This document shows positions 555 to 41,222 of a stretch of DNA of 41,222 bases, piece after piece. Numbering within the stretch: the first letter of the stretch is position 1; each line of letters begins with the position of its first letter. The notes beneath the pieces were generated by a model that saw nothing but the letters and a program-made list of their open reading frames with translations, was not told the origin of the DNA and searched no databases. The stretch lies in contig NIVC01001801.1 of the NCBI GenBank assembly GCA_002269645.1, forward strand, positions 1 through 41,222, read 5' to 3'. Source of the stretch: Macrostomum lignano (lineage: Eukaryota). The position numbers and the translations under genes were made by a program.

Positions 555-3500
555 TCGCCAGGGCCTCGGCATCCCAGCTCGCAGCGTGACCAACTTCGAC
601 TCGGCTCACGACACCAACTGCAACCTCATTGTCGATCACTACTTTGACGATGACCTGACTCGGTTGCTGGGGTAGCGCCGATTCGATCTGGTGAGGCTGT
701 GTGATCTACATTATGACCCGAAAATGGCCTGAGCTTGACGAGCTATTCACATGCACCCGTGTGGGTCTAGTCTGGCCCCATTCATACCCTACGAAGTAAA
801 AGTCCTTAAGGTACAGGAAGTGTACATTCCTGACGATTAGAAAGTCAGGGCCGCTGTGCACCCTGTGTATCTAGCTTAGCGGTCGGCAAAGCTTTTAAAT
901 TTTTCAAAGAAGAGAGAGGAGAGGAGAGGAGAGGAGAGAAGAGAGCTGAGAAGAGACACGAACTTCCAGCGGGGCTATTGTGAAGTTTCAAAGGACCCGA
1001 GCGCCGGATAGAGAGGCTTCGTGTGCTGCATTTGGCCCGCGGGCCGGAGTTCGCCGACCCCCGAATTTTAGCTACATGTACCGATTTATCTCGCAGGCAA
1101 TCCTGAGCACAGTCTCCAATCGACCGGCACCCAAGTGTGATTCCAATCGAGGCCAATTTCTTTTTGGTCTCGTGTAAGAAACGTTCAGGAATCTTAAACC
1201 TGACGACTTGTACAATTCTGGCACATAGCCAACTGTACAGTACCTGATGATTGACCTGAAAGTCAGGGATTCTGTACATGTAAACAGTGCGTGAGCTTGT
1301 GCTCAGCGATCAGGGTAGCTAGACTGTCGCTTCGATCAATACTTGTTAACCCCTTGTGTTGGCTTCTTTTGTAAGAATATTTTGTAAGGGGTTGTAGCCC
1401 AGTGGTTAGGGCGTCGGACTTACGACTTGAAGGTCGGGGGTTCGATTCCCGATCCCACTCGGAACAATTTGTGTCCTTGAGCAGGACACTTAAGTCTGCA
1501 TTGCTTCAGTTCACCCAGCTGTAAAATGGGTGCCAGCATTAGCTGGGGTAATTGAGGGTGTGTGTGGCGACCCCCCCCCAGTCCTTGGATTTGAACAGCC
1601 GTACGCAGCCTTCAGATGCGCGCGCAATAGCAGTGGCTGAGCTGTCGATTGCTCATCTGGCCCAATTGGGGCAGGTGTAATCAGTTATTATGATTATTAT
1701 TATATTATTTGTAACAAAGTCTCCTACCACCCCGGCATCGTCAGGAACTTCCACGTGTGGAACGACCTCTGGATGGCTCGGCCTGACCTCGGCGACGATT
1801 TCAACGGCTGGCAGGCGGTTGATGCCACGCCGCAGGAGCAGAGCCAGGGCGTGTACCGCACCGGGCCCAGCCCGCTCAGGGCCATCAAGGAGGGCCTCGT
1901 GGAACTGCCGTTCGACACGCCGTTCGTCTTCGCCGAGGTCAATGCGTGCATCAAGCACTGGGTCCGCTCCGCCGACGGCTCTTTGAACGAGGTGTTTTCC
2001 GACCCTACCAAGGTTAGTTGCGGCAATTGTTGTGAAATCGACCAATTATTACAATGCGAGGCGCAAAATAATGAGGAGAGCAATGAGCCTGCCGTGAGCA
2101 GTATGACTCGGTGTGTATGATGTGGCCTAGAAGCTGGAATCGCCAGTGATTAGGACGCCTATAAGATGGACAGGTCGCTGCGGCGATGCAGTGTCGCGTT
2201 GGAGACTCGCTTGTCGCCACAATCTTGAAGGTCAACTAGCTGTTTAAGCGAGTCCACCAGCGTCCAGGTCTTGGCGTTGTACAGCGAAAGACGGTCTCGA
2301 CCACCGCCTAGAACAGCGTCGCGCTCTTGCGATCAGGCAGGGCCTCGGACCGCACGACTGTCCTCACAGAACGAAAGACAGCCCAGGCAAACTGCTGACA
2401 TCACGGAAGTTCCATCGCCTGTCGATCAGTGCCACCGTACGAGGGTTGTACATGTAGTGCGATCCGCACTCATTAGGGCCAACCCCCAAGCACAGTGTGC
2501 ATGCCTGGTGATTAGGGCAGCCAGGGCCGGCTGGCGTGCATATCCGTGTGCATGAGTGTGCTCTCGTCACCGAAAAATGCACAAGCTAGTCGCGCTATCC
2601 GTTATTTCTCAGCTACTGCCAATCCCTTCCTAACCAAGGTTGGCCAATTCGTCAGCACTAAGGCTGTGGGCAGCTCTGACAGGCAGGACATCACTCTGCT
2701 GTACAAGTACCCCGAGGGCAGCCGGGAAGAGCAGGCCGCCTTCGACAAGGCTAGCGGCAGCAGCCAGATTCAGGGCAAGGGTGATCGACGCGATGACAAC
2801 AAGGGCAAGCGCGAGGTTAAGCTGAACATCCTGACTCAGGACGTGCTGGTCATTGGCAACGACCTCACCGTGGTGCTGGAAATCAACAACGAGCAAAATA
2901 GAGAGAAAGTGCTCAACTACGGTTTCTGCGTGCACCTTAAGAAGTACAACGGCAAAAATTTGAAGGATTTGGCGCACGAGAAAGGGCAAGTCACCGTGGC
3001 GGGCCACTCGAGTGAGTCTCAGTGACAGTGTCTTTTTGTAGCATATAGAGATGGAGTGTCATACAGATGGGTTGTCATAGAGATGGGGTTTCATAGAAAT
3101 GGGTTGTCATAGAGATGGAGTGTCATAGAGATGGGTGTCATACAGATGGGGTGTCATACAGATGGGGTGTCATACAGATGGGGTGTCATAGAGATGGGGT
3201 GTCATACAGATGAGGTGTCATAGAGATGGAGTGTCATAGAGATGGAGTGTCATAGAGATGGGGTGTCATACAGATGGGGTGTCATAGAGATGGGGTGTCA
3301 TACAGATGAGGTGTCATACAGATCTTAGTCAATACGCTCGTAGATATGTGAATTTAGAGAATTTTTAGACGCTAACAAATAAAAACCAACATTTGGAAGC
3401 CACGGGCATAAAATGCCATCGACAATAACTTTTCCAGGCGCCAACGTGGAGGTGCAAATCAAGGCTCAGGACTACGCCGAGGCGGCTGGCCAAGAGGAGG

Positions 3501-5271
3501 TCGGCATCGAGATCGTGGCCATGGTCGTCCAGGGCAACGACAAGCAGGTGTCGCAGACCATTGTGAACCTGGTGAACCCGGAGATGGAGATTAGCGTGAG
3601 TTTAACTTTCGGTTTACAAATATTTTGTTGCTCAATACTTTGCTAGCTTGACGACCTCAAATCATTAATTTGGCGCCTCTTCCGATTCTTAATTTGGCGC
3701 TATTCCTGATTATCAATTTGGCGCAAATACCGATTCTAAGTTTGGCGCTATTCCCGATTCTTAGTTTGGCGCCATTCCCGATTTTTTGGCGCCATTCCCG
3801 ATTTTTAATTTGGCGCTATTCCCGATTTTTAGTTTTGTGCCATTCCCGATTTATAATTTGGCGCCATTCTGGATCTCAATTTTGATGCCACTACTGGACA
3901 TTTATCTATTATTAAATTCTAGTTCTCTTTAGATTTCTTTTTGTAGTAAATTGGCTCTTTAGCTGGCAAGTTTATTCCTGTTTAAAATTAACAAATTTAA
4001 CAATCTAAAACCGCGCATCAATATCCTGCAGATCTCAGGCGAGGTGGCGCAGAACAGGACCTTCCACTTCCAGTGCGTGTTTGTCAACAATCTGCCATTC
4101 GATCTGACTGAAGGTCGATTTAGCATCGACGGGCCCGGACTGAGGGGCAAAAGTCTCGTACAAAAAGTGGGGTGAGTCCTCGTTGATTTTATCTAATTTT
4201 ACTACTTCCTGAACTCTGTGAGTAGTGCTTAGCGTATATGCTCATAAAAATGATTTTGGCTTTATATTAAGAGTCTATGATACACGCGAAAACTCAAGAG
4301 TCCATAAGAGACATACTCACAATTCAAGAGTCCATAAGACACATACTCAGAATTCAAGAGTCCATAAGACACATGAGCACAATTCAAGAGTCCATAAGAC
4401 ACATACTCAGAATTCAAGAGTCCATAAGACACATGAGCACAATTCAAGAGTCCATAAGACACATGAGCACAATTCAAGACTCCATAAGACACATGAGCAC
4501 AATTCAAGACTCCATAAGACACATGAGCACAATTCAAGACTCCATAAGACACATGAGCACAATTCAAGACTCCATAAGACACATGAGCACAATTCAAGAC
4601 TCCATAAGACACATGAGCACAATTCAAGACTCCATAAGACACATGAGCACAATTCAAGACTCCATAAGACACATGAGCACAATTCAAGACTCCATAAGAC
4701 ACATGAGCACAATTCAAGACTCCATAAGACACATGAGCACAATTCAAGAGTCCATAAGACACATGAGCACAATTCAAGACTCCATAAGACACATGAGCAC
4801 AATTCAAGACTCTATAAGACACATGAGCACAATTCAAGACTCCATAAGACACATGAGCACAATTCAAGACTCCATAAGACACATGAGCACAATTCAAGAC
4901 TCCATAAGACACATGAGCACAATTCAAGACTCCATAAGACACATGAGCACAATTCAAGACTCCATAAGACACATGAGCACAATTCAAGACTCCATAAGAC
5001 ACATGAGCACAATTCAAGAGTCCATAATACACATGAGCGCAATTCAAAACCACATCCGGTGCCACACCCGCAACGCAGGCTGGTCAAGCAGGGTGACAAG
5101 GCCAAATGCAGCATCACGCTGAACCCTGCCCGAGCCGGCAACCGCGTCTTCATCGCCTCCTTCAACTCCAAGGAGTTCAAGGGCGTGACTCGCGAGTACC
5201 CGGTATACGTGGAGCCGGATCCCAACGCTGTGGTGGAAGACGAAATCATCCCAGTCCACAGGGAGTACTAA
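555..5271 (+). CDS. TGM: Protein-glutamine gamma-glutamyltransferase (transglutaminase), 3' portion; 5' exons lie upstream of the window
   Basis: Exons 555-690, 1745-2012, 2639-3011, 3438-3595, 4032-4171 and 5079-5271 all have AG/GT ends, and phases match from 690 onward. Motifs: [20 protein letters not shown]|NFHVWND (catalytic His), [11 protein letters not shown] (catalytic Asp), [19 protein letters not shown]...[12 protein letters not shown], then two C-terminal beta-barrels ([18 protein letters not shown]). Stop TAA at 5269-5271. Exon 555-690 needs a +1 and a -1 correction (see findings). Confidence 0.93.
1388..1710 (+). mobile_element. tRNA-derived SINE family 1, full length
   Basis: tRNA-like head with A box TAGCCCAGTGG and B box GGTTCGATTCC. 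Central gtgtccttgagcaggacacttaa...ctgtaaaatggg resembles CORE-type SINE domains. A 3' hairpin is followed by an (ATT)n tail. Other copies occur in the window. Confidence 0.9.
3046..3323. repeat. 16-bp minisatellite (GTCATASAGATGGRGT)n in a TGM intron
   Basis: Direct tandem repeat, about 17 units. Confidence 0.95.
3668..3880. repeat. Degenerate ~24-bp tandem repeat (TTTGGCGCYATTCCCGATTYTTAR)
   Basis: About 9 units; the overlapping spurious ORF shows 8-aa periodicity. Confidence 0.85.
4291..5046. repeat. 30-bp minisatellite (AATTCAAGACTCCATAAGACACATGAGCAC)n in the last TGM intron
   Basis: About 25 near-identical units. The array explains the periodic ORFs 4225-5271, 4262-5065, 4277-5122 and others. 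Confidence 0.97.
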
Positions 5272-6086: not shown

Positions 6087-8514
6087 TTAGCCATCGCGAC
6101 CGCTACCAGTAATCCTACAACAGCCGAGCCGACAATTCGCAAATTTACGAAACTCTGGCAGCAACAGAATAAACAGCAGAGGATTAGTGATGCTATTCAA
6201 AGCCACGAGCATTGGATAGAACAGTCTGGCCAACAGGCTGTCGATACCCGCGTTGCCAGTCAGCGGCAGGTCTGAATTGTTCAGATTTCGCCAGATGAAG
6301 CTGACAGCACTGAGGCTGTGCAGCAGGGCGTACAAGCAGCACGAGGCCGCTATGGCTTTCGTAAGCCGCCTGGTTGCTTTGGAAACGATGCTTAAACGAC
6401 GTTCGTTTACAGACGATGCAGCAGCCAATTCGACTGGCTGATTGTCAAGGCTGCGACGCAAAACGGTCAGCGTGATGGCATAGGTGGCCAGCATAACAGT
6501 CAGGGCAGTAGCCAGATTGTGAGAAAGTTTGCCACGCCGAAAGCCGTCAACAGCGGCGTTGGGGCGCTGAATGTGACGCATCTGGTCGGGAGTTTTCGAT
6601 GGAACATTGGTCACATCATGTACATGGGAAAGGAGCCTGAATATCGTTATATTCACCCCGTTATGAATGAAGTTGTGAAATCATGAAGTGAACGAACTCA
6701 CTCATGAACTCACTCATGAACTCACTCATGAACTCACTCATGAACTCACTCATGAACTCACTCATGAACTTACTCATGAACTCACTCATGAACTCACTCA
6801 TGAACTCAACTCATGAACTCACTCATGAACTCACTCATGAACTCACTCATGAACTCAACTCATGAACTCACTCATGAACTCACTCATGAACTCACTCATG
6901 AACTCACTCATGAACTTACTCATGAACTCACTCATGAACTCACTCATGAACTCACTCATGAACTCACTCATGAACTTACTCATGAACTCACTCATGAACT
7001 CACTCATGAACTCACTCATGAACTCACTCATGAACTCACTCATGAACTCACTCATGAACTCACTCATGAACTCACTCATGAACTCACTCATGAACTTACT
7101 CATGAACTCACTCATGAACTCACTCATGAACTTACTCATGAACTCACTCATGAACTCACTCATGAACTCACTCATGAACTCACTCATGAACTCACGCATG
7201 AACTCACTCATGAACTCACTCATGAACTCACTCATGAACTCAACTCATCATGAACTCACGCATGAACTCAATGATCATGAACTCACTCATGAAAGCACTC
7301 ATGAATTCACCCATGAACTAACTCGCTCATGAACAACTCACTGACTCATAAACTTATTAATAAACTCACAACCTCACTCTTGAATTCACTGATGAAAACT
7401 CACCTATGAGCTTAATCATTAACTTGCTCAAAAAGTCACTCAAAAGCTTAATATATCAAGAACTCACTCGCTCAATCATCGATTCACTCGTCTGGGGGGG
7501 GGGGGCATAGCCCGCGGGGTCTCGCACGGCTCTCTGATGTGCCAGCGGCCCAGGCTCGATTCCAATTGCAGTCAAATTGATTTGGGGCTAAATTGGAATC
7601 TCGGCTTGGCTCTGCTCGTGCAATGAACGCCCTGCCCTTGAGGGCCAACCCCAAGGCACAGTGAGGGCCAACCCCCAAGGCACAGTGAGGGCCAACCCCC
7701 AAGGCACAGTGAGGGCCAACCCCAAGGCACAGTGAGGGCCAACCCCCAAGGCACAGTGAGGGCAAACCCCAAGGCACAGTGAGGGCCAACCCCAAGGCAC
7801 AGTGAGGGCCAACCCCAAGGCACAGTGAGGGCCAACCCCAAGGCGCAGTGAAGTGTGCATGCCTAACGATAAATAAAGTTAGGGCCGCTGTACACTCCTG
7901 TCAGAGTGTGTGCCTGTGCGTACATGGTATGACTGCTCAGCGGAGTCGGCGGAACTCACTCACTTGTAGCCAGGAGTTGCATTGGCGGCGGCCCCCTCAG
8001 CCAGCGAAGGCACAGCGGAGGTGCTGATGAGGGAGAACGGCAAGTTCACAGGCAGGCTGGATGCAGCTGGCAAGGCAACCAGCAGCAGTCGCAGTCTGCG
8101 CCAGTGCAGGCGGTACCAGAACGGGGCACCCAAGCAGACGCATCGTTCAATTGACAAGCCGACTAAACAGTACGTGCTGGCGTTCACAAATAGCCAGAAG
8201 GTCATGTGGCTGTACACAACAGTGCAGTAGATTTGCCACAGCGCCAGCTCAGCGGCAGGATGCGGTCTCGGCACCAGCGGCAGCTGCACTGTGACCAGGT
8301 GTGTCAGCATCACTCCAATGTCAAACGCAGCGTTGGCTCGCATCAAAACGGTGCAAATTGCGGTGCCAATTTTGCACCGCATCGAATAGGCAATCAGCAG
8401 GCAGTTGAGGCAGAGGCCAAGCAGAAGGACTGGCAGCTGTGCGATGCCAATCGCTATTCGCAGGCTTCTCTCGGTGTCAGATAGCACTGACAGTGGAGAC
8501 GATACGGAGGACAT
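6087..8514 (-). CDS. Orphan rhodopsin-like (class A) 7TM GPCR, 2 exons, one -1 indel (pseudogene or consensus error)
   Basis: Exon 1 (8514-7964) covers TM1-4: GLCLNCLLI, LMRANAAFD, CLVGLSIERC. The donor TACAA|GTGAGT joins in phase 2 to acceptor CCGACCAG|A at 6581, giving GYKCVTFSAPTPLLTAFGVANFLTIWLLP (ECL2 Cys and TM5). One missing base at about 6503-6505 then leads into LTVMLATY...TM6...NSITNPLLFILLLPEFRK and the stop at 6089-6087. The repaired protein is about 348 aa. Confidence 0.8.
6694..7330. repeat. 12-bp minisatellite (ACTCATGAACTC)n in the GPCR intron
   Basis: About 50 units; source of the THEL, MNSL and MSEF ORFs. Confidence 0.97.
7500..7895 (+). mobile_element. SINE family 2 (tRNA-like head) with an internal 22-23 bp minisatellite expansion and 3' stem-loop
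   Basis: Head ggggcatagcccgcgggg ... ggctcgattcc carries degenerate A and B boxes. About 9 copies of gagggccaaccc(c)caaggcacagt span 7640-7850. The 3' end gtgtgcatgcctaacgataaataaagttagggccgctgtacac is shared with the copy at 25049-25175. Confidence 0.7.
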
Positions 8515-11125: not shown

Positions 11126-11377
11126 AAATATTGGGGAGATCGGTAACCGGAAGCCCTAAATCGCGGAGACCCTTAACCTGTTATTTATACTCTGGGAAGC
11201 CCTTTGGGGACTAAAGGTTAATGAAGGCTTCTATTTTTCCTTTCAGGTCTGAACAACAGCAAGAGATCCATCAGCTAGACTGGAAGTGTTCAATCTCCAG
11301 CACTAAATTGACAATATCTCACCCTCTAGACTTTCGAACTTACTGAATTGCACTGAATATGTTAATGAGTGGGTAAG

Positions 11378-11712
11378 TGAGTGAGTGAGTGAGTGAGTGA
11401 GTGAGTGAGTGAGTGAGTGAGTGAGTGAGTGAGTGAGCGAGTGAGTGAGTGAGTGAGTGAGTGAGTGAGTGAGTGAGTGAGTGAGTGAGTGAGTGAGTGA
11501 GTGAGTGAGCGAGTGAGTGAGTGAGTGAGTTAGTGAGTGAGTGAGTGAGTGAGTTAGTGAGTGAGTGAGTGAGTGAGTGAGTGAGTGAGTGAGTGAGTGA
11601 GTAAGTGAGTGAGTGAGTGAGTGAGTGAGTGAGTGAGTTAGTGAGTGAGTGAGTGAGTGAGTGAGTGAGTGAGTGAGTGAGTGCGTGAGTGAGTGAGTGA
11701 GTGAGTGAGTGA
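11378..11712. repeat. (GAGT)n microsatellite
   Basis: About 80 tetramers with rare variants. Confidence 0.98.
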
Positions 11713-12160
11713 GAGATTGGGTGTCCAGAAACGTTAAGTTTAAAATCCCGTAACGAAAAGCTCTGTGCACTGCTTAATTTCCGGTCCAATTCTGTACTTT
11801 TAGGAACCGCAGACGAAAATGTCAACACACAGTGGTCAGTGCAGTATTAGCAATATGTATTGATCAGATCCTAGCAAGTTTTGACGCAAATTTTTCCTCT
11901 AAAATCATGCGGCCCGGGGGCTGCAGCAAATCAATACGAATTGAGAATCCATGCCGCAGGGCCAAGCATTAATAAGCAGGGATCCCTAGACTCTTGCATC
12001 CGGTGTACTGCACTTGGGGGTTGTCGCACATCAATCAATTTCTTAGGGATTATATTTCTTGGGTAAAAAATATTCTGCAAAGAAAAGTTCCCATTTCTTC
12101 TTAAAAAGACTGCTGACAGCAATTATTTTGACCGAACTTTTTTGGCAGAGTAGAGCTTTG

Positions 12161-12985
12161 GACTGACTGACTGACTGACTGACTGACTGACTGACTGACT
12201 GACTGACTGACTGACTGACTGACTGACTGACTTGAGTGAGTGGGTGACTGACTGACTGACTGACTGACTGACTTGAGTGAGTGGGTGACTGACTGACTTG
12301 AGTGAGTGGGTGACTGACTGACTGACTGACTGACTGACTGACTGACTGACTTGAGTGAGTGGGTGACTGACTGACTGACTGACTGACTGACTGACTGACT
12401 GACTGACTGACTTGAGTGAGTGGGTGACTGACTGACTGACTGACTGACTGACTGACTGACTGACTGACTGACTGACTGACTGACTGACTGACTGACTTGA
12501 GTGAGTGGGTGACTGACTGACTGACTGACTGACTGACTGACTGACTGACTGACTTGAGTGAGTGGGTGACTGACTGACTGACTGACTGACTGACTGACTG
12601 ACTGACTGACTGACTGACTGACTGACTGACTTGAGTGAGTGGGTGACTGACTGACTGACTGACTGACTGACTGACTGACTGACTGACTTGAGTGAGTGGG
12701 TGACTGACTGACTGACTGACTGACTGACTGACTGACTGACTGACTGACTGACTGACTGACTGACTTGAGTGAGTGGGTGACTGACTGACTGACTGACTGA
12801 CTGACTGACTGACTGACTGACTGACTGACTGACTGACTGACTGACTTGAGTGAGTGGGTGACTGACTGACTGACTGACTGACTGACTGACTGACTGACTG
12901 ACTGACTGACTGACTGACTGACTGACTGACTGACTGACTGACTTGAGTGAGTGGGTGACTGACTGACTGACTGACTGACTGGCTG
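12161..12985. repeat. Compound (GACT)n microsatellite punctuated by TTGAGTGAGTGGGT
   Basis: Direct reading of the sequence; explains the SQSV ORFs. Confidence 0.98.
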
Positions 12986-13133
12986 ACTCCCAACCAATCG
13001 CCTACACAAAGCTGAGCCAATGAGCTCTAGCCTGAAAAAAGCATACTTAAAATAGCGCTTAGCAGTCTGTCTCTGTTTCTGCTTCTTCAATCCTTTTTTG
13101 CTTTCAACGACAAAAATTAAAATAAAAAGCACA

Positions 13134-16100: not shown

Positions 16101-17005
16101 TGATGCTTGTGGCACTGATTCTCACTGATTCAAATCGAGAGAAACCAACGCAATTCCCGCAGGCTGTCACCATGGCAACACCCAATCGAGCAGGCCTTGA
16201 CGCTCGCCGTACCCGCCTGGCCATCCCACTGACTTGGCTGATGGCCGGTCTGATGGCCAGCCCGCTGCTCTGGCTCGGTGCGCTCGTCCGCGATACAAGC
16301 GTAGCTCCAGCCGACAGCAGCAGCCGTGCCGAGGGCTTGGTCTGCACCGAGCGTTCGCTGAGCCACGCCGAGGCAGCCGCCAAAAAGCTGGCGTACAGCG
16401 CCGCCACAGTCGGGGTGCAGTACGCCTTGCCGCTGGCCATCCTGCTCGGCGTGTACAGACGCATCCGACGCCGGTTGCAATGCCGACTGACTCGGGGTCG
16501 ACTGGCTGAGCAACGTCGGCAGCGCAAAGCGAATCTGCTTTTAGTAGGCGTTGCTTTACTTTTCGGCATCTCTTGGCTGCCGTTGAACTGCATCAATCTG
16601 GTCACGGATGCCCGGCTGTGGCTGGCTAGACTGCAGCAGCAACAACAGCAACAGCAGCAACCGCACGCCATTTCCAGCTTCTTAGCCGAGGCGCAGTCAC
16701 TGAGCTCGGTTCGAGTGGACTTCTCCGCCCCGACCGTGCAGTCCGTCTGCCTGCTCTGCGTGCTTGCCAGCGCCTGCCTCAACCCGCTGCTCTACGGCCT
16801 GTTTAACGAGAACTTCCGGGCGGAGTTCCGGTCTCTGCTTAGCCGAAGTTCCGATTCGGCGACCGCGGCCCAGACCGCAGAAATGAGAATTCGAAGAGCT
16901 GGCGCGACATCGGAGCGGACGGGACTTCACCCGACCGACTTGGCAGTCTGTTCGGCTGGGGTGGTGACTGAGGGATTTGAGCAGCTGCTTGAGACTGAAC
17001 TTTAA
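13134..17005 (+). CDS. Neuropeptide Y/F (NPY/NPF/PrRP-type) receptor-like class A GPCR, 3 exons, 458 aa
   Basis: Exons 13134-13232 (ATG...CAG|GTAACT), 13618-14052 and 16163-17005 join in phase 0 with no indel. Motifs: LGALGN (TM1), NLALSD (TM2), CKIV...TAIAIDRCR (TM3), QYALP (TM5), LFGISWLPLNCINL (TM6), SACLNPLLYGLFNENFRAEF (TM7/H8). N-terminal NGT glycosylation site. Exon 1 is less certain than exons 2-3. Confidence 0.88.
13251..13575. repeat. 27-bp minisatellite (CTGGGAGGCTGGCCCAGCAACTGAGGAT-like) in receptor intron 1
   Basis: About 12 units fill most of the 385-bp intron. Confidence 0.95.
14447..16130. repeat. Composite satellite of 25-bp (GATGCWTGTGGCACTGATTCTCACT) and 10-bp (GATTCTCACT) units, with higher-order structure
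   Basis: Direct reading; 15061-15420 recurs identically at 15421-15780. Confidence 0.97.
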
Positions 17006-18470: not shown

Positions 18471-18855
18471 TAGAAGTTACAATTAAGCACTAGAAGACAT
18501 CTTCGCTATTGTAAAGTATACATGATATTGCATAAAATTTAAATAAAAATTTATACCACTCGATATGATAAAACACGCAAGTACACAAATGTACTTTTTA
18601 AAATTGAAATATAACCTTGCACAGATACAGTGAGCAAACTTATTTTTAGCTCTACAATTGACTAGAAAATTAATTTTGTGTAACAAAATTGAGTTCCATT
18701 GAATGCGAAAGCAAAGTAAGGATTTTGCACATTAAATGATGACATGTATAATAAGTCACAATATTTTTTTTAAATAAATACATTGCACATTATTTCTGAT
18801 CAAACAAATTAATATAACTATTTAATATAAAATGCAGCGTTGTTTAAAATTAAAG

Positions 18856-20004
18856 ACCAACAGTTGAGGGGAGAGTGACAACAGATAAGGGGGAGGGACT
18901 AACAGGTGAGGGGGGAGTGACCAACAGGTGAGGGGGGAGTGACCAACAGGTGAGGGGGAGTGACCAACAGGTGAGGGGGAGGGACTAACAGGTGAGGAGA
19001 TTGACCAACAGGTGAGGGGGGAGTGACCAACAGGTGAGGGGGAGGGACTAACAGGTGAGGGGGGAATGACCAACAGCTGAGGGGGGAGTGACCAACAGGT
19101 GAGGGGGAGGGACCAACAGGTGAGGGGGATGACCAACAGCTGAGGGGGGAGTGACCAACAGGTGAGGGGGAGGGACCAACAGGTGAGGGGGAGGGACCAA
19201 CAGGTGAGGGGGGAGTGACCAACAGCTGAGGGGGAGTGACCAACAGGTGAGGGGGAGTCACCAACAGGTGAGGGGGTGACCAACAGGTGAGGGGGAGGGA
19301 CCAACAGGTGAGGGGGGAGTGACCAACAGCTGAGGGGGGAGTGACCAACAGGTGAGGGGGGAGTGACCAACAGGTGAGGGGGGTGACCAACAGGTGAGGG
19401 GGAGGGACTAACAGGTGAGGGGAGAGTGACAACAGATAAGGGGGAGTGACCAACAGGTGAGGGGAGTGACAACAGATAAGGGGGAGTGACAACAGATAAG
19501 GGGGAGTGACCAACAGGTGAGGGGAGTGACAACAGATAAGGGGGAGTGACCAACAGGTGAGGGGAGTGACCAACAGGTGAGGGGGAGGGACCAACAGGTG
19601 AGGGGGGAATGACCAACAGCTGAGGGGGAGTGACCAACAGGTGAGGGGGGGACTAACAGGTGAGGGGGAGTGACCAACAGGTGAGGGGGGAGTGACCAAC
19701 AGGTGAGGGGGAGTGACCAACAGGTGAGGGGGGGACTAACAGGTGAGGAGATTGACCAACAGGTAAGGGGGGAGTGACCAACAGGTGAGGGGGGAATGAC
19801 CAACAGCTGAGGGGGAGTGACCAACAGGTGAGGGGGAGGGACTAACAGGTGAGGGGGAGGGACTAACAGGTGAGGGGGAGGGACTAACAGGTGAGGGGGG
19901 AGTGACCAGCAGCTGAGGGGGGAGTGACCAACAGGTGAGGGGGAGGGACTAACAGGTGAGGGGGGAGTGGCCAACAGGTATGAGGAGAGTGACCAACAGG
20001 TGAG
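18856..20004. repeat. G-rich ~21-22 bp minisatellite (GACCAACAGGTGAGGGGGAGT)n immediately 3' of the MLK stop codon
   Basis: About 50 variant units with G4-G6 tracts. Confidence 0.96.
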
Positions 20005-20015
20005 TGAGAGCCGAC

Positions 20016-21033
20016 TCAAACGCAGCTGTTTTTATCATCGTCGCCCTCGTCTGGATGCGTGGGCGTGTTGCCCACCGCGGAGCCGTAGCCGGTGGAATCT
20101 GACGGAGTCTGACGGATGACGAAGGACGGGGGCGGCGGGTCTTCATCATCTGGCGATGCTGGACAGTCTGGATCTTCAACGGCCGCCGCCACCGCTTCCG
20201 CAGAGGAAGTGGCTGGCGCAGCAGCAGCGGCAGCAGCAGCGGAGGCGGCCATTTCCGCTTGTCTCCGACGAACCAGCAGGTCGAGCTGGTAGGGCCGCTC
20301 CAGACTCTCTGCCGCTCCCGCGCTGCCGCAGCCAATTTCGCAGAGTTCCTCGTGTCCGCTGCCGCTGCTGCTCCGCTTCCGGCGGGGCGGCGGCCGAAGA
20401 TAAGTCGACCCAGCCTGCTCGGCATCAGTCTCGTCGTCGAAGGTCACGTGACGGGCCGGATGCTGCGGACGGTGGTGCGGATGCGACTCGGTGTCGCTGC
20501 TCTGCGCCCGGAACCGGCGGGGCAGCGAGGCGGAGCCGGACCTGACGGAGGCGGCGCGGACGCTCAGCAGGGCGGCAGCAGCGCCTGCAGAGTTGCCACC
20601 GGCCTCCGTCAGCACGCGTGGCGAATTCGTAGATTCTTCTTCGCCGCCTTCGCCACCGTCGCCGTCGCCGTCGAGTTCATCGACAGAGCTGATCGGCGGC
20701 CGAAGGTCGGCGGGCAGACAGGCCAGCCGGACGTCGGCGTGCAGCACCGGAGCGGCCAGCAGGACGGCCGGGGCGGCCCAGGCTGGCAGGCGGCCGCGGG
20801 CGGCCGGGCGACGGGCGAGGGCTTCGCGAAGGCGGGACAGCAGCGACTGGTGCGGCCTCCTGATTGATGGGGCGGCGCCGCTGTCTGAGGGAGTGCGAGG
20901 GGGGCGGGCGGGCAATTTTTTAGTTTTTTAGCGGCTCTTTTTACTCAAGCCACTCAGATGCAGGTGTCCAGCACCTTAGGAAGGTTTCGGCATTTGACGC
21001 TCTCTGACTCCATAGGCTTCTGTGTTTCTGTCA

Positions 21034-35800: not shown

Positions 35801-37089
35801 CCAATTCGAAATCAATCGCATTCGCAGCTGCAGGCTACAGCAAATTGTTTACCGATCATTAATAGAAAATTCGTAATTTAAATATCAAAGATAAAAATAC
35901 AGGTGCCTGCACGTTTACACTGGACATGTACCACATTTGTATCTAAACTGTAAACAAACACGGCAGTGGTTTGGAAAATTAATAAACCAAGTCATATCCT
36001 AAGAATTTTTGAATTAACGCCACTTACTCCGCTTCTCGGGCCAAAAGTTATTTAAATATAGCAATTGCACCCGTATAGCGGATGGACTAAAATTATTAAT
36101 ATTTTTCATTCCAATAAGTTGGCTGGGCGATTAATAATATGGATTAGTTTATTTTATAATTCACACTACGTATACACTTATTGTAAATAAAATATTACAG
36201 ATTAGTTTATCACGATAGTGAATTGCGTGGAGGATAACAGTCTGGCGCAATGTTGCAGAAAATAAAAGTTATTATTCGAGACATAAGAAAATCTATTTGC
36301 ATAGCAACGTCGGTTGTTTTCTTTCGTTCTGACCAACTTTTAAATAAATCAGTCATCAGAAATATTTCGATAATTTTATGCACGCAAAAAACCCGTGTTG
36401 CTTTGCAAGTCTTTAGGAAAATTGTAACAAAATAAAAAAAGCATTTTTTCATTAAGCTTAGCGCGTAACTCGCAGCAAAAACGACAAAATTAAACTATTG
36501 GAAAATTTGCGGAATTAAAGCCAAATTTAGCAACGCAAGCACAACATAAAGATATTCGCCGTTTATATTAAAAACTTTAGAATTTTATATTAATACAACA
36601 ATTAAAATATATGTAAACATTTGAAGACTGTAGAAAGCTTGTCAATCTTTTAATATAGTACTTTATAAGTAGACTAATATTGAATATTTTACTGAACTTT
36701 CCGTGGCCTGTGAACTATCTATTGTCTTACCATCTATTAGATTGAAAATGAATCACAACAGTGAAACAAACAAAAATATAGCGTATGAAAAAAACAAAGA
36801 CGATGTTAATTAATATTGAGGGACGAATTATGAAAAATTATCTCGTCAATCATGATTATAAAAAGTGAGTTGCTTGGGTTTATATTTTGTTTAACTTCGC
36901 TCGCAACAAAACATTTAAGCGGTCGGCAGCGGCTCCTCTTCCAGACAGGCTGCGGGCTTTGTCTCCATCAGCTCGCCGGTGAAGAGGCTGCAAACGATTA
37001 AGGAAATTGAAAATAGAATTTGAACATCGCGAGGTTAACAGTATCGATAGGGAATACCAAAAAATCCAATATAGAAATTTTAAATTTAA

Positions 37090-37700: not shown

Positions 37701-39090
37701 GAAGGAAATTCTAAAGTTCCAAGTAAAAATGTTCCAGCAAAGTTCAAGACAGCACATGTAAATTTCCAGGAAGAAAAGCCGAATTCGAAGCCACTCTTAG
37801 AATTAAAAAAACAGCCACGGCTCACCAGTGCATCAGCCTGGCAGCGGTCGGACAGGCCCTCAGGCCGCGCCATAGCAACCAGTCACGCGACGCTCTGAGC
37901 TCTGGCAGCCGCACGAGGTTCAACGGTCCGCGCCGCCGCAGTCGGCCAGTCGGCTGGCACGCCGGTCTCTGCTGCCGCTGCAGCCGCCGCCCTCGCACCA
38001 CGGCTGAAGAGGCCGCAAAGTTGCCGCCGAGGCCCGGGGGCCGCTGAGCCGGTAGCTGTAGCCGCCACAGCCTGGCTGCTCGGCCGCCGCTTTAGCCAAC
38101 ACCTGGTTGGGCGATGCCTGACGGATTCGGCTAGCAACGCCGGAGTCAGGTCGCAGAGTAGACGAGGCTGACAGTCACCGTTTCCAATACCTATTTAAGG
38201 CAGCGCATTTTGAGAGAAACCGCTCGAAATACGTTATAAAAAATTACTCCGTTTCTAAAATGGTTTTAAAGGCTTAAATGTTTGCAAAAGAAATACCCTG
38301 TATTATTGTTGTGACGCTGTAGCAACGAAGTATTTACAGCTTTTTTGTATTAATAGCCTGTTAATTTTAATTGGTAATTTCATAAAAATCGCATTATCAG
38401 CATCACACTCATTTTACTCTCAAAAAATTATGCCGCAAAACAACATTTGTTTAATAAAGTTAGGCAAAATACGAGTAGTTACAAAAAATCTACAGTAGCA
38501 TAATTAAGAATTCTAATTTTGACGTATAAAAATAACTCTCTTACTATAATGGAAAATATAAAAAGTCTCACCGACAGCGTTCGCAAAGGCCGGCAGGGCC
38601 CGCCCGGCCAAGGCGCCGGTGGACAGACATCCGAGGTCGACAACATCGGCATTGGCATGGCGCGAGACGCCTGGCCAAGGCCAGAGTACCGCAGGCGTCG
38701 ACGCGGCAGCAGCCCACTCGGCGTCGACGTCGGAGTTGACCTCGCCGCCGTCGTCGCCCTCGCATTCGTTGTCGTCGCCGAACCAGACGGCTACGCCGGC
38801 AACTCGCAGTCCGTGGCGTCTGGCGGCGGCGCCAGCAGGCGGGGCGCCTCTTCGGGCCGGGCGCCCAGCCGGTGGCAGCGGGGCGATGCGGCCAGCAGAA
38901 GCAGCAGCTCGACGTCCGGCCAAGCCGCGGCTAGGCGGGCCAGCTCCGGCTCCGAGTCGAATACGGTGACGCCGACGCCAAGGCGACGAGCGTGCCTGGC
39001 CAGGCCGCGAGTTTTGCACGGGTTGGCCAGCAGGATGGCGTGGCCCGGGACTCCGGCGGACACGGCAGCGTTTAGGTCGGACTGCTCAAT

Positions 39091-39560: not shown

Positions 39561-40073
39561 TAGGCAAATAAGGTCAAAGACAGGTTATTTTAACCGTCAG
39601 CCTCACCTTAGAGTAGGCCCGAAAGGACCAGCGGCCGCTGAGAGCCAACACGTGGGTCAGTGGCCAGCTGCCCAGAGTCTGGGCGCTGGTTGACGCGTGC
39701 ACGCCGGGGAAACCGGCTGCACCAGTCGGCGCAGACAGCGCTGGGGCTGGCAAGTCGCAGGCCACAACGGCTGATCGCATTGCTCAAGATTGGGCAGGTG
39801 AGGCGCCAGAGCACATCCAATTGGTGGGCAAACTGCCGGTGTTGGGCTGAGAGCAGGTGCTGCTGCTGAGGCTGCTGATGCTCAGTTGCGATTCTCTCAT
39901 CAGGTAAATAACACAAAAACAACGCTAAACTTGCTACTGATCTAAATTAAGTCTTTGTTAGTAGTATGACATGTATATGATGCGCAAGTATAAAAAATTA
40001 AATCTGATTGATTGCAACAGACAATGGAGGCGATAAAATATTTAAGAGGAAACACTCAAAAAAACAGAAAAAG

Positions 40074-40187
40074 TCAACAATCCAGAGTCAAGTGCCAACA
40101 CGGATCAGGGTCCCAAGGTGGGACTCGATTGTGATCAGCTAGCACTAGGCGCCGGCAGGCACTCAGGCGGCTCTGCGATGCGTCCAC
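40074..40187 (-). promoter_or_regulatory. 3' exon of a putative uCC-type regulatory uORF (PPW stall motif) upstream of the ODC/AZIN-like gene
   Basis: After acceptor CCCGCAG|GTG (40187) the frame reads VDASQSRLSACRRLVLADHNRVPPWDPDPCWHLTLDC* (PPW at 40121-40113, TGA at 40076-40074). It lies on the same strand about 170 nt upstream of the first ODC-like ATG (39900). Confidence 0.7.
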
Positions 40188-41222
40188 CTGCGGGCAGCGG
40201 GGCAGATGATGGGGAGTGATTCATGCGTGTGGGCTGTGCCACATTATGGCTTTTTCAGCAAATGAGTTATTATAAAATAATTTAAGAATTAAAATAACAT
40301 AGGCCCTCATCGAAACATTTTTCATTTCAATCTTTCAGTGTTTGTGTTATGCTTTTATGCAGTGTATTTTAATGCTTCTATGTAATTTGTTGCACTTTTG
40401 GGCTATTTTTGTGGTCTATGTTGCATGTCTATAGATTGTCTATAGATTTTTCAAACTTATTCCAATATGGAACTACACAATATACATATGGTAGCAAACA
40501 TGTCTATTGGTTAAGTCTATAACCCAATAGAAGACTCGAGTTCCTCCTAAAAAAGCTTTAAAGCTATAAAATTTCTATGGCACCAAGTCTGACAGTTGGG
40601 TGAAGATGGGTCGAATTAGTCAGTGGTTAGTCAATATGGGGTATATATAAGACTTATGGTTGATGTCTGTCAGTTCATCTGTTACTCTTTTTGTCTGCCA
40701 CAAAATATTTATTACAACATTAGCATTATGATATTAGAATGAGATAGCAATAGATAAACTCTTTTTAATATTAGTGATAACAAGCAACTAATATTTATTA
40801 GAAGTATAAGCATATCTAAAAAATATTTACCATAATTTTTTGTTTATATTTTTATTAACCTGGCTATCTGTCAATCATCTATCAAATATAAGCCTAACAG
40901 ATAAATTATGAATGCAATAAATCATCTAATTAAAGACATTGAGTTTTATGGACTAGAAGATTGGTTAAAATTAAAATTGTCTCCTATTGGATATGTAGTA
41001 GGGCATAGTTTAGGGGCAGAATTTAGACAGGACAAATATGCTTTATACTACTGTCAGTAGTTTTGGCCAGCGAAGGTAATTATGATGGGGGTAAACCGCG
41101 AATTTTTGGGCTCTCTACTAATATAGAACAGTTGGGCCTCCTAGAAAAGAAAGCCTGTCTGAACACCCATGCTGCATTCCGCAGCTCAACTTAGAATTTA
41201 AGGAAGTTAAGGTAAAAGGGAT

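What the first reader, a model, noticed from the sequence alone, without database searches (positions are those of the whole stretch)
40074..40187. Hidden polyamine-sensing uORF (uCC with PPW motif) upstream of a dead ODC paralogue; absent from the ORF track
Seen: on the minus strand a good 3' splice site (ctgcccgcag|GTG, 40187) opens the frame VDASQSRLSACRRLVLADHNRV-PPW-DPDPCWHLTLDC*, just upstream of an ODC-fold gene. An in-frame TGA at 40223-40221 implies that the start of this ORF is on an exon further upstream, and none was found in the window. Established: ODC/antizyme-inhibitor mRNAs of animals and fungi carry an upstream conserved coding region (uCC). It starts at a near-cognate codon (AUU in AZIN1), and its C-terminal PPW motif causes polyamine- and eIF5A-dependent stalling and ribosome queuing. 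From memory (needs verification), vertebrate AZIN1 uCC ends ...Q-VYNYPEGLGEVLYREQFDFNAE-PPW-EPS*. The peptide here has the same 22-residue spacing from V to PPW, with L8, D18, N20 and PPW-[DE]-P in register. Inference: this is a complete polyamine feedback module (uCC plus antizyme-inhibitor-like pseudoenzyme) in what appears to be a flatworm. A single missing C (GAC CCT GA -> GAC CCC TGA) would give PPWDP-stop, closer to the known uCC end.
Basis: partly seen in the sequence, partly recalled or inferred. Interest (0 to 1): 0.85.

Follow-up and report, generated by a model that had tools for sequence, protein, structure and literature searches.

The report
Decayed polyamine-sensing uORF, flatworm ODC pseudogene
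Upstream of a broken, enzyme-dead ornithine-decarboxylase-like gene of the flatworm Macrostomum lignano lies a short reading frame whose core (D-x-N-x-x-PPW-D-P) matches the known polyamine-sensing upstream ORF of animal ODC/antizyme-inhibitor mRNAs, but this copy has lost the canonical Pro-Ser-stop ending, so it is most likely a relic of a known regulatory module, not a working one.

Summary
The window is M. lignano contig NIVC01001801.1. On the minus strand an AUG-less 48-codon frame (40220-40074) contains PPW and lies 173 nt upstream of the first ATG before an ODC-like gene.

I retrieved five real vertebrate AZIN1 leaders. The candidate's ADHNRVPPWDPD matches FDFNAEPPWDPS at 7 of 12 positions. 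It is the best match in the six-frame translation of the whole window (BLOSUM score 44, next best 25), and none of 5000 simulated leaders reached that score. Homology to the uCC core is therefore likely.

The module is not complete here:
- The Pro-Ser-stop ending is missing; ten extra codons follow PPWDP, and a TGA sits one indel away.
- No near-cognate start codon has a good context.
- There is no consensus splice donor after the block.
- No transcript evidence links the block to the gene.
- The ODC-like ORF needs at least 9 frame switches relative to its intact 77%-identical relative, whereas the neighbouring kinase exons are clean.

The gene family itself has lost the catalytic residue (Lys69 replaced by Gln).

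Verdict: this is a pseudogenised copy of a known kind of module, in a lineage-specific dead ODC paralogue. Interest is moderate to low.

The parts
40074..40220 (-). AUG-less frame of 48 codons plus stop (ITPHH...PPWDPDPCWHLTLDC*), the candidate uCC
   Evidence: Translation. It is stop-to-stop, bounded by TGA 40223-40221 and TGA 40076-40074.
40104..40139 (-). uCC core match ADHNRVPPWDPD, compared with vertebrate FDFNAEPPW[E/D/H]PS
   Evidence: 7 of 12 residues are identical to L005. BLOSUM score is 44, the top of the whole window, and 0 of 5000 simulated leaders reach it.
40113..40121 (-). Pro-Pro-Trp codons (CCA CCT TGG), the predicted stall site
   Evidence: One of only two PPW in the six-frame translation of the window.
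40105..40107 (-). Out-of-frame TGA directly after GACCC, close to where a canonical uCC would stop
   Evidence: DNA comparison: candidate CCT GAT CCG against vertebrate CCT AGC TGA. GC content falls from about 0.6 to 0.3 from here on.
40221..40223 (-). In-frame TGA that closes the frame upstream. It overlaps an ATG (40224-40222) that opens a 28-codon ORF in another frame.
40188..40197 (-). Acceptor-like ctgcccgcag. It lies inside the GC-rich block and is probably not used.
   Evidence: It does not match [T/C]TNCAG.
39607..39880 (-). ODC-like gene, first homologous exon (5' limit unknown). It aligns to L001 nt 1-293, and the homologous frame switches four times.
   Evidence: The donor is AAG|GTGAGG at 39607|39606.
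38572..39081 (-). ODC-like exon 2, containing the ANPCK / antizyme-binding-region stretch. A 2-nt insertion shifts the frame near 38830.
   Evidence: Pfam hit; blastn; tblastn frames -3 then -2.
37826..38190 (-). ODC-like exon 3, with four frame switches
   Evidence: The NCBI model P0002 patches it with a micro-gap.
36915..36987 (-). ODC-like last exon, ending in a TAA stop
39898..39900 (-). First ATG downstream of the PPW frame (173 nt after its stop). It is out of frame with the homologous poly-Q frame.

Best explanation
The PPW frame is a decayed copy of the animal ODC/antizyme-inhibitor upstream conserved coding region (uCC). It sits in the leader region of a Macrostomum-lineage ODC paralogue that no longer has the catalytic lysine. 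In an intact version the element would work as shown for AZIN1. A few scanning ribosomes start at a weak codon in the uCC. When polyamines are high they interfere with eIF5A, and the ribosome stalls while making Pro-Pro-Trp. Scanning ribosomes then queue behind it, start more often on the uCC, and the main ORF is repressed. At this locus the unit is a pseudogene. The main ORF carries at least 9 frameshifts, and the uCC has lost its Pro-Ser-stop, most simply through one indel. What is shown: the sequence match, the ODC homology, the loss of Lys69 and the frameshifts. What is inferred: shared ancestry with known uCCs, membership of the same transcript, and the mechanism.
For: - Five vertebrate AZIN1 leaders end in YREQFDFNAEPPWxPS*, with the stop 113-129 nt before the main AUG.
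- The candidate ADHNRVPPWDPD shares D, N, P, P, W and P with the invariant positions, plus D at the variable position. It scores 44, the next best in the window scores 25, and 0 of 5000 simulated leaders reach 44.
- It is on the same strand as an ODC homologue, 173 nt upstream of the first ATG, and has no AUG.
- High GC ends at PPWDP, where a TGA sits one indel out of frame.
- tblastn of the intact relative against the window shows frames -2/-1/-3/-2/-3 in exon 1, -3/-2 in exon 2, and -2/-1/-2/-1/-3 in exon 3.
- The kinase exons on the same contig each read in a single frame over about 1.7 kb, so a poor assembly consensus is unlikely.
- M. lignano has an antizyme gene (PMC1874602).
- The mechanism is taken from PMC2811004, PMC11058473, PMC8705083 and PMC10855120.
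Against: - The match rests on one 12-residue stretch. Nothing N-terminal to it is similar.
- The Pro-Ser-stop, invariant in all five vertebrate sequences, is absent.
- The in-frame near-cognate codons (AUC 40220, CUG 40205, GUG 40187) all have a pyrimidine at -3.
- No homologue of the peptide was found among 1.84 billion representative proteins.
- The only relative's transcript contig does not reach the leader, so neither conservation nor transcript membership could be tested.
- No flatworm uCC was available for comparison.
Confidence: 0.68

Rival explanations
1. This is a working variant uCC. The frame is translated, PPW still stalls ribosomes in response to polyamines, and the ten extra codons are tolerated. 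The start codon comes either from an upstream exon or from the M. lignano spliced leader. That leader ends in AUG, and trans-splicing at 40187 would place the AUG exactly in frame (AUG|GUG GAC...).
For: - Stalling at PPW happens during elongation, so it need not depend on where the stop is.
- The SL sequence CGGTCTCTTACTGCGAAGACTCAATTTATTGCATG ends in ATG, and about 30% of M. lignano genes are trans-spliced.
- CAG|GTG falls on a codon boundary of the PPW frame.
- The NCBI record carries a transcript-based gene model at this locus.
Against: - The downstream ORF cannot make the full protein because of at least 9 frame switches, so there is little for the uCC to regulate.
- The acceptor does not fit [T/C]TNCAG, and the GC-rich block continues about 58 nt upstream of it.
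- An SL-supplied AUG would remove the weak-start logic of known uCCs.
- No called protein in public data carries SL-derived residues fused to this peptide.
Confidence: 0.14
2. The resemblance is chance. A GC-rich, proline-codon-rich stretch of leader, outron or promoter-proximal DNA happens to read PPWDP in one frame.
For: - GC-rich DNA is rich in CCN codons.
- The Pro-Ser-stop and a good start codon are missing.
- Residues beyond the 12-mer add nothing.
Against: - The score of 44 is far above the rest of the window (25) and above the best of 5000 simulated leaders (38).
- PPW occurs only twice in about 82,000 six-frame positions.
- The match is on the correct strand, upstream of the one gene family known to carry this motif.
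Confidence: 0.13
3. The block is a former coding exon: either an N-terminal extension of the ODC-like protein or part of another gene.
For: - In this contig GC-rich islands are usually exons.
- The relative's ORF is open to the 5' end of its contig, so the true N-terminus lies further upstream than nt 134 of L001.
Against: - The frame is closed by stops on both sides.
- There is no GT[A/G]AG donor after it.
- It has no Pfam hit and no protein homologue.
- The specific uCC match is left unexplained.
Confidence: 0.05

Closest known systems
Vertebrate AZIN1 uCC (Ivanov et al. 2008 and 2018; described in PMC2811004, PMC11058473 and PMC8705083; sequences read here from L004-L008)
   Same: - It is an AUG-less short frame upstream of a catalytically dead ODC homologue.
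- It has the core D-x-N-x-x-P-P-W-[D]-P in the same register.
- It is of similar size (48 against about 52 codons).
- It lies one to two hundred nt before the main ORF.
   Different: - It has no Pro-Ser-stop; ten more codons follow.
- It has no AUU in an A-at-minus-3 context.
- The N-terminal 30 or more residues are unrelated.
- The main ORF here is frameshifted.
- The dead ODC is not an AZIN1 orthologue. It scores better against ODC (3e-14) than against AZIN1 (1e-7).
uCCs of invertebrate ODC mRNAs (six animal phyla, ending in Pro-Ser; PMC2811004)
   Same: It occupies the same position, in the leader of an ODC homologue, and has two adjacent prolines near the C-terminus.
   Different: I could not obtain any invertebrate uCC sequence to compare. 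The papers I could read do not name the six phyla, so I could not tell whether Platyhelminthes are among them. The Pro-Ser ending is absent here.
Other polyamine-responsive uORFs: the plant AdoMetDC 'short' uORF ending in Pro-Ser, the mammalian AMD1 uORF, and the yeast HOL1 uORF (named in PMC2811004 and PMC10855120)
   Same: They use the same general logic: a nascent peptide or termination context senses polyamines and eIF5A and blocks downstream initiation.
   Different: They belong to different genes and have different peptides. None has the PPW core.
Flatworm spliced-leader 3'-terminal AUG used as initiator (from my own knowledge of the Schistosoma work; M. lignano SL sequence from PMC8629364)
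   Same: The SL ends in AUG and would be in frame with the PPW ORF if 40187 were a trans-splice acceptor.
   Different: There is no evidence that 40187 is used, and it does not match the trans-acceptor motif.

Membership tests
Animal ODC/AZIN uCC | Lies in the 5' leader of an ODC-homologue mRNA | tested here: inconclusive
   On the genome it is on the same strand, 173 nt upstream of the first ATG and about 195 nt upstream of the first stretch homologous to L001. No transcript covers both, because L001 stops at the CAG repeat. The NCBI CDS model starts further downstream, at 38815.
Animal ODC/AZIN uCC | Conserved C-terminal core containing Pro-Pro-Trp | tested here: met
   ADHNRVPPWDPD against FDFNAEPPW[E/D/H]PS: 7 of 12 residues identical to L005, score 44, 0 of 5000 simulated leaders reach it, top of the window.
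Animal ODC/AZIN uCC | Ends in Pro-Ser-stop shortly after PPW | tested here: not met
   PPW-D-P is followed by D-P-C-W-H-L-T-L-D-C-stop. All five vertebrate uCCs read PPW-x-P-S-stop. A TGA lies one indel out of frame at 40107-40105.
Animal ODC/AZIN uCC | No AUG; starts at a conserved near-cognate codon (mostly AUU) in a good Kozak context | tested here: inconclusive
   The frame has no AUG, so that part is met. The in-frame AUC, CUG and GUG codons all have C or T at -3, whereas vertebrates have AAAAUUC. Conservation of a start codon cannot be assessed.
Animal ODC/AZIN uCC | The coding frame is conserved among orthologues | not testable with these tools
   phmmer against 1.84 billion representatives gave only chance hits to tandem-repeat proteins. 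The exact look-up found nothing. No eukaryotic DNA collection could be searched.
Animal ODC/AZIN uCC | Polyamine- and eIF5A-dependent repression of the main ORF | not testable with these tools
   This needs reporter or Ribo-seq experiments.
Antizyme-inhibitor-like pseudoenzyme (dead ODC homologue) | ODC fold (Orn_Arg_deC_N) | tested here: met
   Window exon E 1e-7. P0001 matches Pfam at 7e-14, above the gathering score, and human ODC structures at 3e-14.
Antizyme-inhibitor-like pseudoenzyme (dead ODC homologue) | Loss of catalytic residues | tested here: met
   In the HMMER alignment to human ODC...FYAVKCN... aligns to ...STSAQAL..., so Lys69 is replaced by Gln; FHVGS aligns to VWFGD, so His197 is replaced by Trp. 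The same residues are present in the window copy.
Antizyme-inhibitor-like pseudoenzyme (dead ODC homologue) | Intact ORF at this locus | tested here: not met
   There are at least 9 frame switches inside exons relative to L001. The NCBI product is a 167-aa partial protein.
Antizyme-inhibitor-like pseudoenzyme (dead ODC homologue) | Binds antizyme | not testable with these tools
   The stretch that aligns to ODC residues about 115-148 is the best conserved part of the protein; I recall this as the antizyme-binding region, but did not check it. M. lignano has an antizyme gene.

The most novel reading that the evidence does not exclude
Macrostomum flatworms evolved their own antizyme-inhibitor-like dead ODC (Lys69 replaced by Gln), independently of vertebrate AZIN1/2. 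This paralogue kept the ancestral uCC, so that 'uCC plus pseudoenzyme' is a recurrent solution. An intact copy is expressed elsewhere (as in the L001 organism), and the window holds a decayed duplicate. A bolder variant is that, in intact copies, the spliced-leader AUG starts the uCC, replacing the weak near-cognate start.
Probability: 0.25. Interest if true: 0.55.

Novelty: new member of a known kind. Interest (0 to 1): 0.35.

Why it matters
If the homology holds, the D-x-N-x-x-PPW-x-P core of the polyamine-sensing uCC is shared between vertebrate AZIN1 and a flatworm ODC paralogue. That would underline how old and how sequence-specific the stalling peptide is. It would also point to a second, independent 'dead ODC under uCC control' in animals. 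M. lignano is a transgenic-capable model, so an intact copy could be used to test uCC function outside vertebrates and fungi. The copy in this window is a pseudogene and is of limited use beyond serving as a marker.

Tried and rejected
1. phmmer of the 48-aa frame against 1.84 billion representative proteins gave three hits. All are translated tandem repeats with multi-stretch scores, so they are chance matches.
2. An exact look-up of the GTG-started peptide in public assemblies found nothing on record.
3. A third homologue search with the 66-aa ANPCK stretch of P0001 was meant to reach true flatworm ODCs and their leaders.
4. The primary papers (PNAS 2008, Mol Cell 2018) are not held. I therefore read the uCC sequence directly from five AZIN1 RNA contigs.
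5. One review writes the motif as PPWxxPS*. The real sequences show PPWxPS*, so I used the sequences.
6. My first guess, that the ODC-like protein lacks about 22 residues after the PLP-lysine strand, was wrong. The HMMER alignment shows no such deletion.
7. I considered assembly error as the cause of the frameshifts and rejected it, because about 1.7 kb of equally GC-rich kinase exons on the same contig read cleanly.
8. A scan of 40320-39880 for GT[A/G]AG donors and [T/C]TNCAG trans-acceptors found none.
9. GC by codon position is compatible with coding in the PPW frame (lowest GC at position 2), but with 48 codons the evidence is too weak to count.
10. Pfam found nothing for the PPW peptide.

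Full report
**What is there**

The window is the whole 41,222-bp contig NIVC01001801.1 of the Macrostomum lignano assembly GCA_002269645.1.

On the minus strand, translating 40235-40071 gives SPHA*ITPHHLPRCPQVDASQSRLSACRRLVLADHNRVPPWDPDPCWHLTLDC*.
- The frame runs stop-to-stop over 48 codons (40220-40077) and contains no AUG.
- It is closed upstream by TGA 40223-40221 and downstream by TGA 40076-40074.
- The sequence ctgcccgcag|GTG is at 40197-40188|40187.
- The frame sits in a GC-rich island (about 40255-40105, GC 0.6-0.73 in 30-nt windows). The flanking DNA is 17-30% GC.
- In this contig such islands are mostly exons.

**The gene downstream**

Four further GC-rich blocks follow on the same strand. 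Only the block with the ANPCK stretch hits Pfam Orn_Arg_deC_N (E 1e-7).

A protein search found two relatives only:
- P0002, the partial 167-aa NCBI product of this locus.
- P0001, a 354-aa protein on a 1,235-nt intronless Logan contig (L001, sample SRR28338166).

L001 is about 77% identical in DNA to the window blocks. It fixes the exon structure as follows:
- Exon 1 runs from an unknown 5' limit to 39607.
- The remaining exons are 39081-38572, 38190-37826 and 36987-36915.
- All three donors read GTGAG.

P0001 passes the Pfam gathering score (7e-14) and matches human ODC structures at 3e-14, better than AZIN1 at 1e-7. In that alignment the PLP lysine (FYAVKCN) aligns to STSAQAL, so Lys69 is Gln. 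FHVGS aligns to VWFGD, so His197 is Trp. The best conserved stretch aligns to ODC residues about 115-148; I recall this as the antizyme-binding region but did not check it. M. lignano does have an antizyme gene (PMC1874602).

**This copy is a pseudogene**

tblastn of the full L001 open frame against the window shows the homologous reading frame switching inside exons:
- Exon 1: -2, -1, -3, -2, -3.
- Exon 2: -3 to -2, through a 2-nt insertion near 38830.
- Exon 3: -2, -1, -2, -1, -3.

That makes at least nine switches in about 1.2 kb. The NCBI model patches one of them with a micro-gap and is marked partial.

The neighbouring SH3-kinase gene on the same contig reads in one frame per exon over about 1.7 kb of equally GC-rich sequence. 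A poor assembly consensus is therefore an unlikely cause. I conclude that the ODC-like locus here is decayed, while its relative in the L001 organism keeps a 399-codon open frame.

**Is the PPW frame a uCC?**

The primary papers were not available, so I fetched real leaders. A search with AZIN1 gave Logan RNA contigs from five different vertebrates (L004-L008). Each has an AUG-less frame ending YREQFDFNAEPPWxPS-stop, with x being E, D or H. The stop lies 113-129 nt before the main AUG, and the known AUU start sits in the context AAAAUUC. The 'PPWxxPS*' printed in one review has one x too many.

The candidate's last 12 residues before the canonical stop position are ADHNRVPPWDPD.
- They share D, N, P, P, W and P with the invariant vertebrate positions, plus D at the variable one. 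That is 7 of 12 identical to L005.
- Scanning all six frames of the window with FDFNAEPPWDPS, this is the top hit: BLOSUM62 score 44, against 25 for the next best.
- None of 5000 first-order Markov simulations of the 481-nt leader reached 44; the highest was 38.
- PPW occurs only twice in the whole six-frame translation.
- Extending the comparison to 22 or 28 residues lowers the score to 30 and 26.

I take the core match as real evidence of homology with the uCC. It rests on a single short stretch.

**What does not fit**

- The Pro-Ser-stop is missing. It is invariant in all five reference sequences and is described as the ending of animal uCCs in six phyla (PMC2811004).
  - The DNA reads CCA CCT TGG GAC CCT GAT CCG..., against vertebrate CCA CCT TGG GAA CCT AGC TGA.
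  - In the candidate a TGA lies directly after GACCC in another frame (40107-40105). One indel, for example loss of AGCT, would convert a canonical end into what is seen.
  - Local GC drops from about 0.6 to about 0.3 at this point, not at the actual stop.
  - The adjacent gene has about one frameshifting indel per 130 nt, so one indel in a 150-nt uCC is about what would be expected.
- The in-frame near-cognate codons (AUC 40220, CUG 40205, GUG 40187) all have a pyrimidine at -3.
- The proposed acceptor lies inside the GC-rich block, about 58 nt from its upstream edge. It does not match the M. lignano trans-acceptor motif [T/C]TNCAG (PMC8629364; scan).
- No GT[A/G]AG donor exists anywhere between 40320 and 39880. 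If the block is in the mRNA, it is probably continuous with the AT-rich spacer and exon 1, rather than being a separate spliced exon.
- L001 ends in the CAG repeat that corresponds to about 39880, so no transcript evidence reaches the block.
- No homologue of the peptide is among 1.84 billion representative proteins or on record by exact look-up. uORFs are rarely called as genes, so this says little.

**An idea noted but not supported**

The M. lignano spliced leader ends in AUG. Trans-splicing at 40187 would fuse that AUG in frame to GUG GAC.... The chance of being in frame is one in three, and the acceptor does not fit the motif. I give this low weight.

**Mechanism**

For intact uCCs the mechanism is established for AZIN1:
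- Initiation at the AUU start is weak.
- Polyamines interfere with eIF5A, and the ribosome pauses while synthesising PPW.
- Scanning ribosomes queue back to the start codon, uCC initiation rises, and the main ORF is repressed (PMC11058473, PMC8705083, PMC10855120, PMC2811004).

For this locus the mechanism is inferred by homology only. With a frameshifted main ORF there is little left to regulate.

**Verdict**

The frame is most likely (about 0.7) a relic of a known kind of element. It is attached to a lineage-specific dead ODC paralogue, and both are pseudogenised in this copy. It is a new member of a known kind. It is worth following up only by finding the intact copy or orthologues.

Noticed in passing
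window 39440-39110 (minus); also 37700-37240, 30760-29700, 32000-31600, 4225-5270, 6800-7330, 11300-13000, 18825-20030: Introns and intergenic stretches are filled with long minisatellites, for example a unit of about 21 nt (caattgaccttcaattgtccc) that makes up nearly all of intron 1 of the ODC-like gene. They produce many long spurious ORFs.
   Followed up: no
window about 32840-26429, minus strand: This is an SH3 plus protein-kinase (mixed-lineage-kinase-like) gene with a leucine-zipper-like exon. The NCBI model is 1069 aa with a Pkinase domain. Its exons read cleanly in one frame each, and I used it as an internal control for assembly quality.
   Followed up: partly
window 16103-17005 (+); 8595-7960 and 6656-6087 (-): There is a rhodopsin-family GPCR ORF (7tm_1, E 3e-14) and a second GPCR-like gene on the other strand (NPLLF...EFRKF).
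   Followed up: partly
window 1755-2120 (+): An ORF contains a transglutaminase-core-like motif ([11 protein letters not shown]). It has no Pfam hit at E 0.01 for this fragment alone.
   Followed up: partly
window 40908-41194 (+): AT-rich ORFs just upstream of the PPW block, on the opposite strand, carry a GHSLGA motif resembling a serine-hydrolase nucleophile elbow. They are interrupted by a stop and have no Pfam hit. This may be a decayed fragment.
   Followed up: partly
window 40224-40138 (minus): An AUG-started 28-codon ORF (MNHSPSSAPLPAGGRIAEPPECLPAPSAS*) in another frame overlaps the first half of the PPW frame. A 7-codon AUG ORF (MWHSPHA*) ends at the in-frame TGA 40223-40221. If transcription starts upstream of about 40250, both would be read before the PPW frame.
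   Followed up: no
window 39965-39959 (minus): A perfect TACTAAC branch-point-like box lies 14-40 nt before several AG dinucleotides (39945-39922), just upstream of the first ATG. This could be a cis or SL trans-splice acceptor region that would leave the PPW block outside the mature mRNA.
   Followed up: no
L004-L008 (vertebrate AZIN1 RNA contigs): The residue after PPW varies (E, D, H), while YREQFDFNAEPPW and PS-stop are invariant. The motif is PPWxPS*, not the PPWxxPS* printed in PMC10855120.
   Followed up: yes
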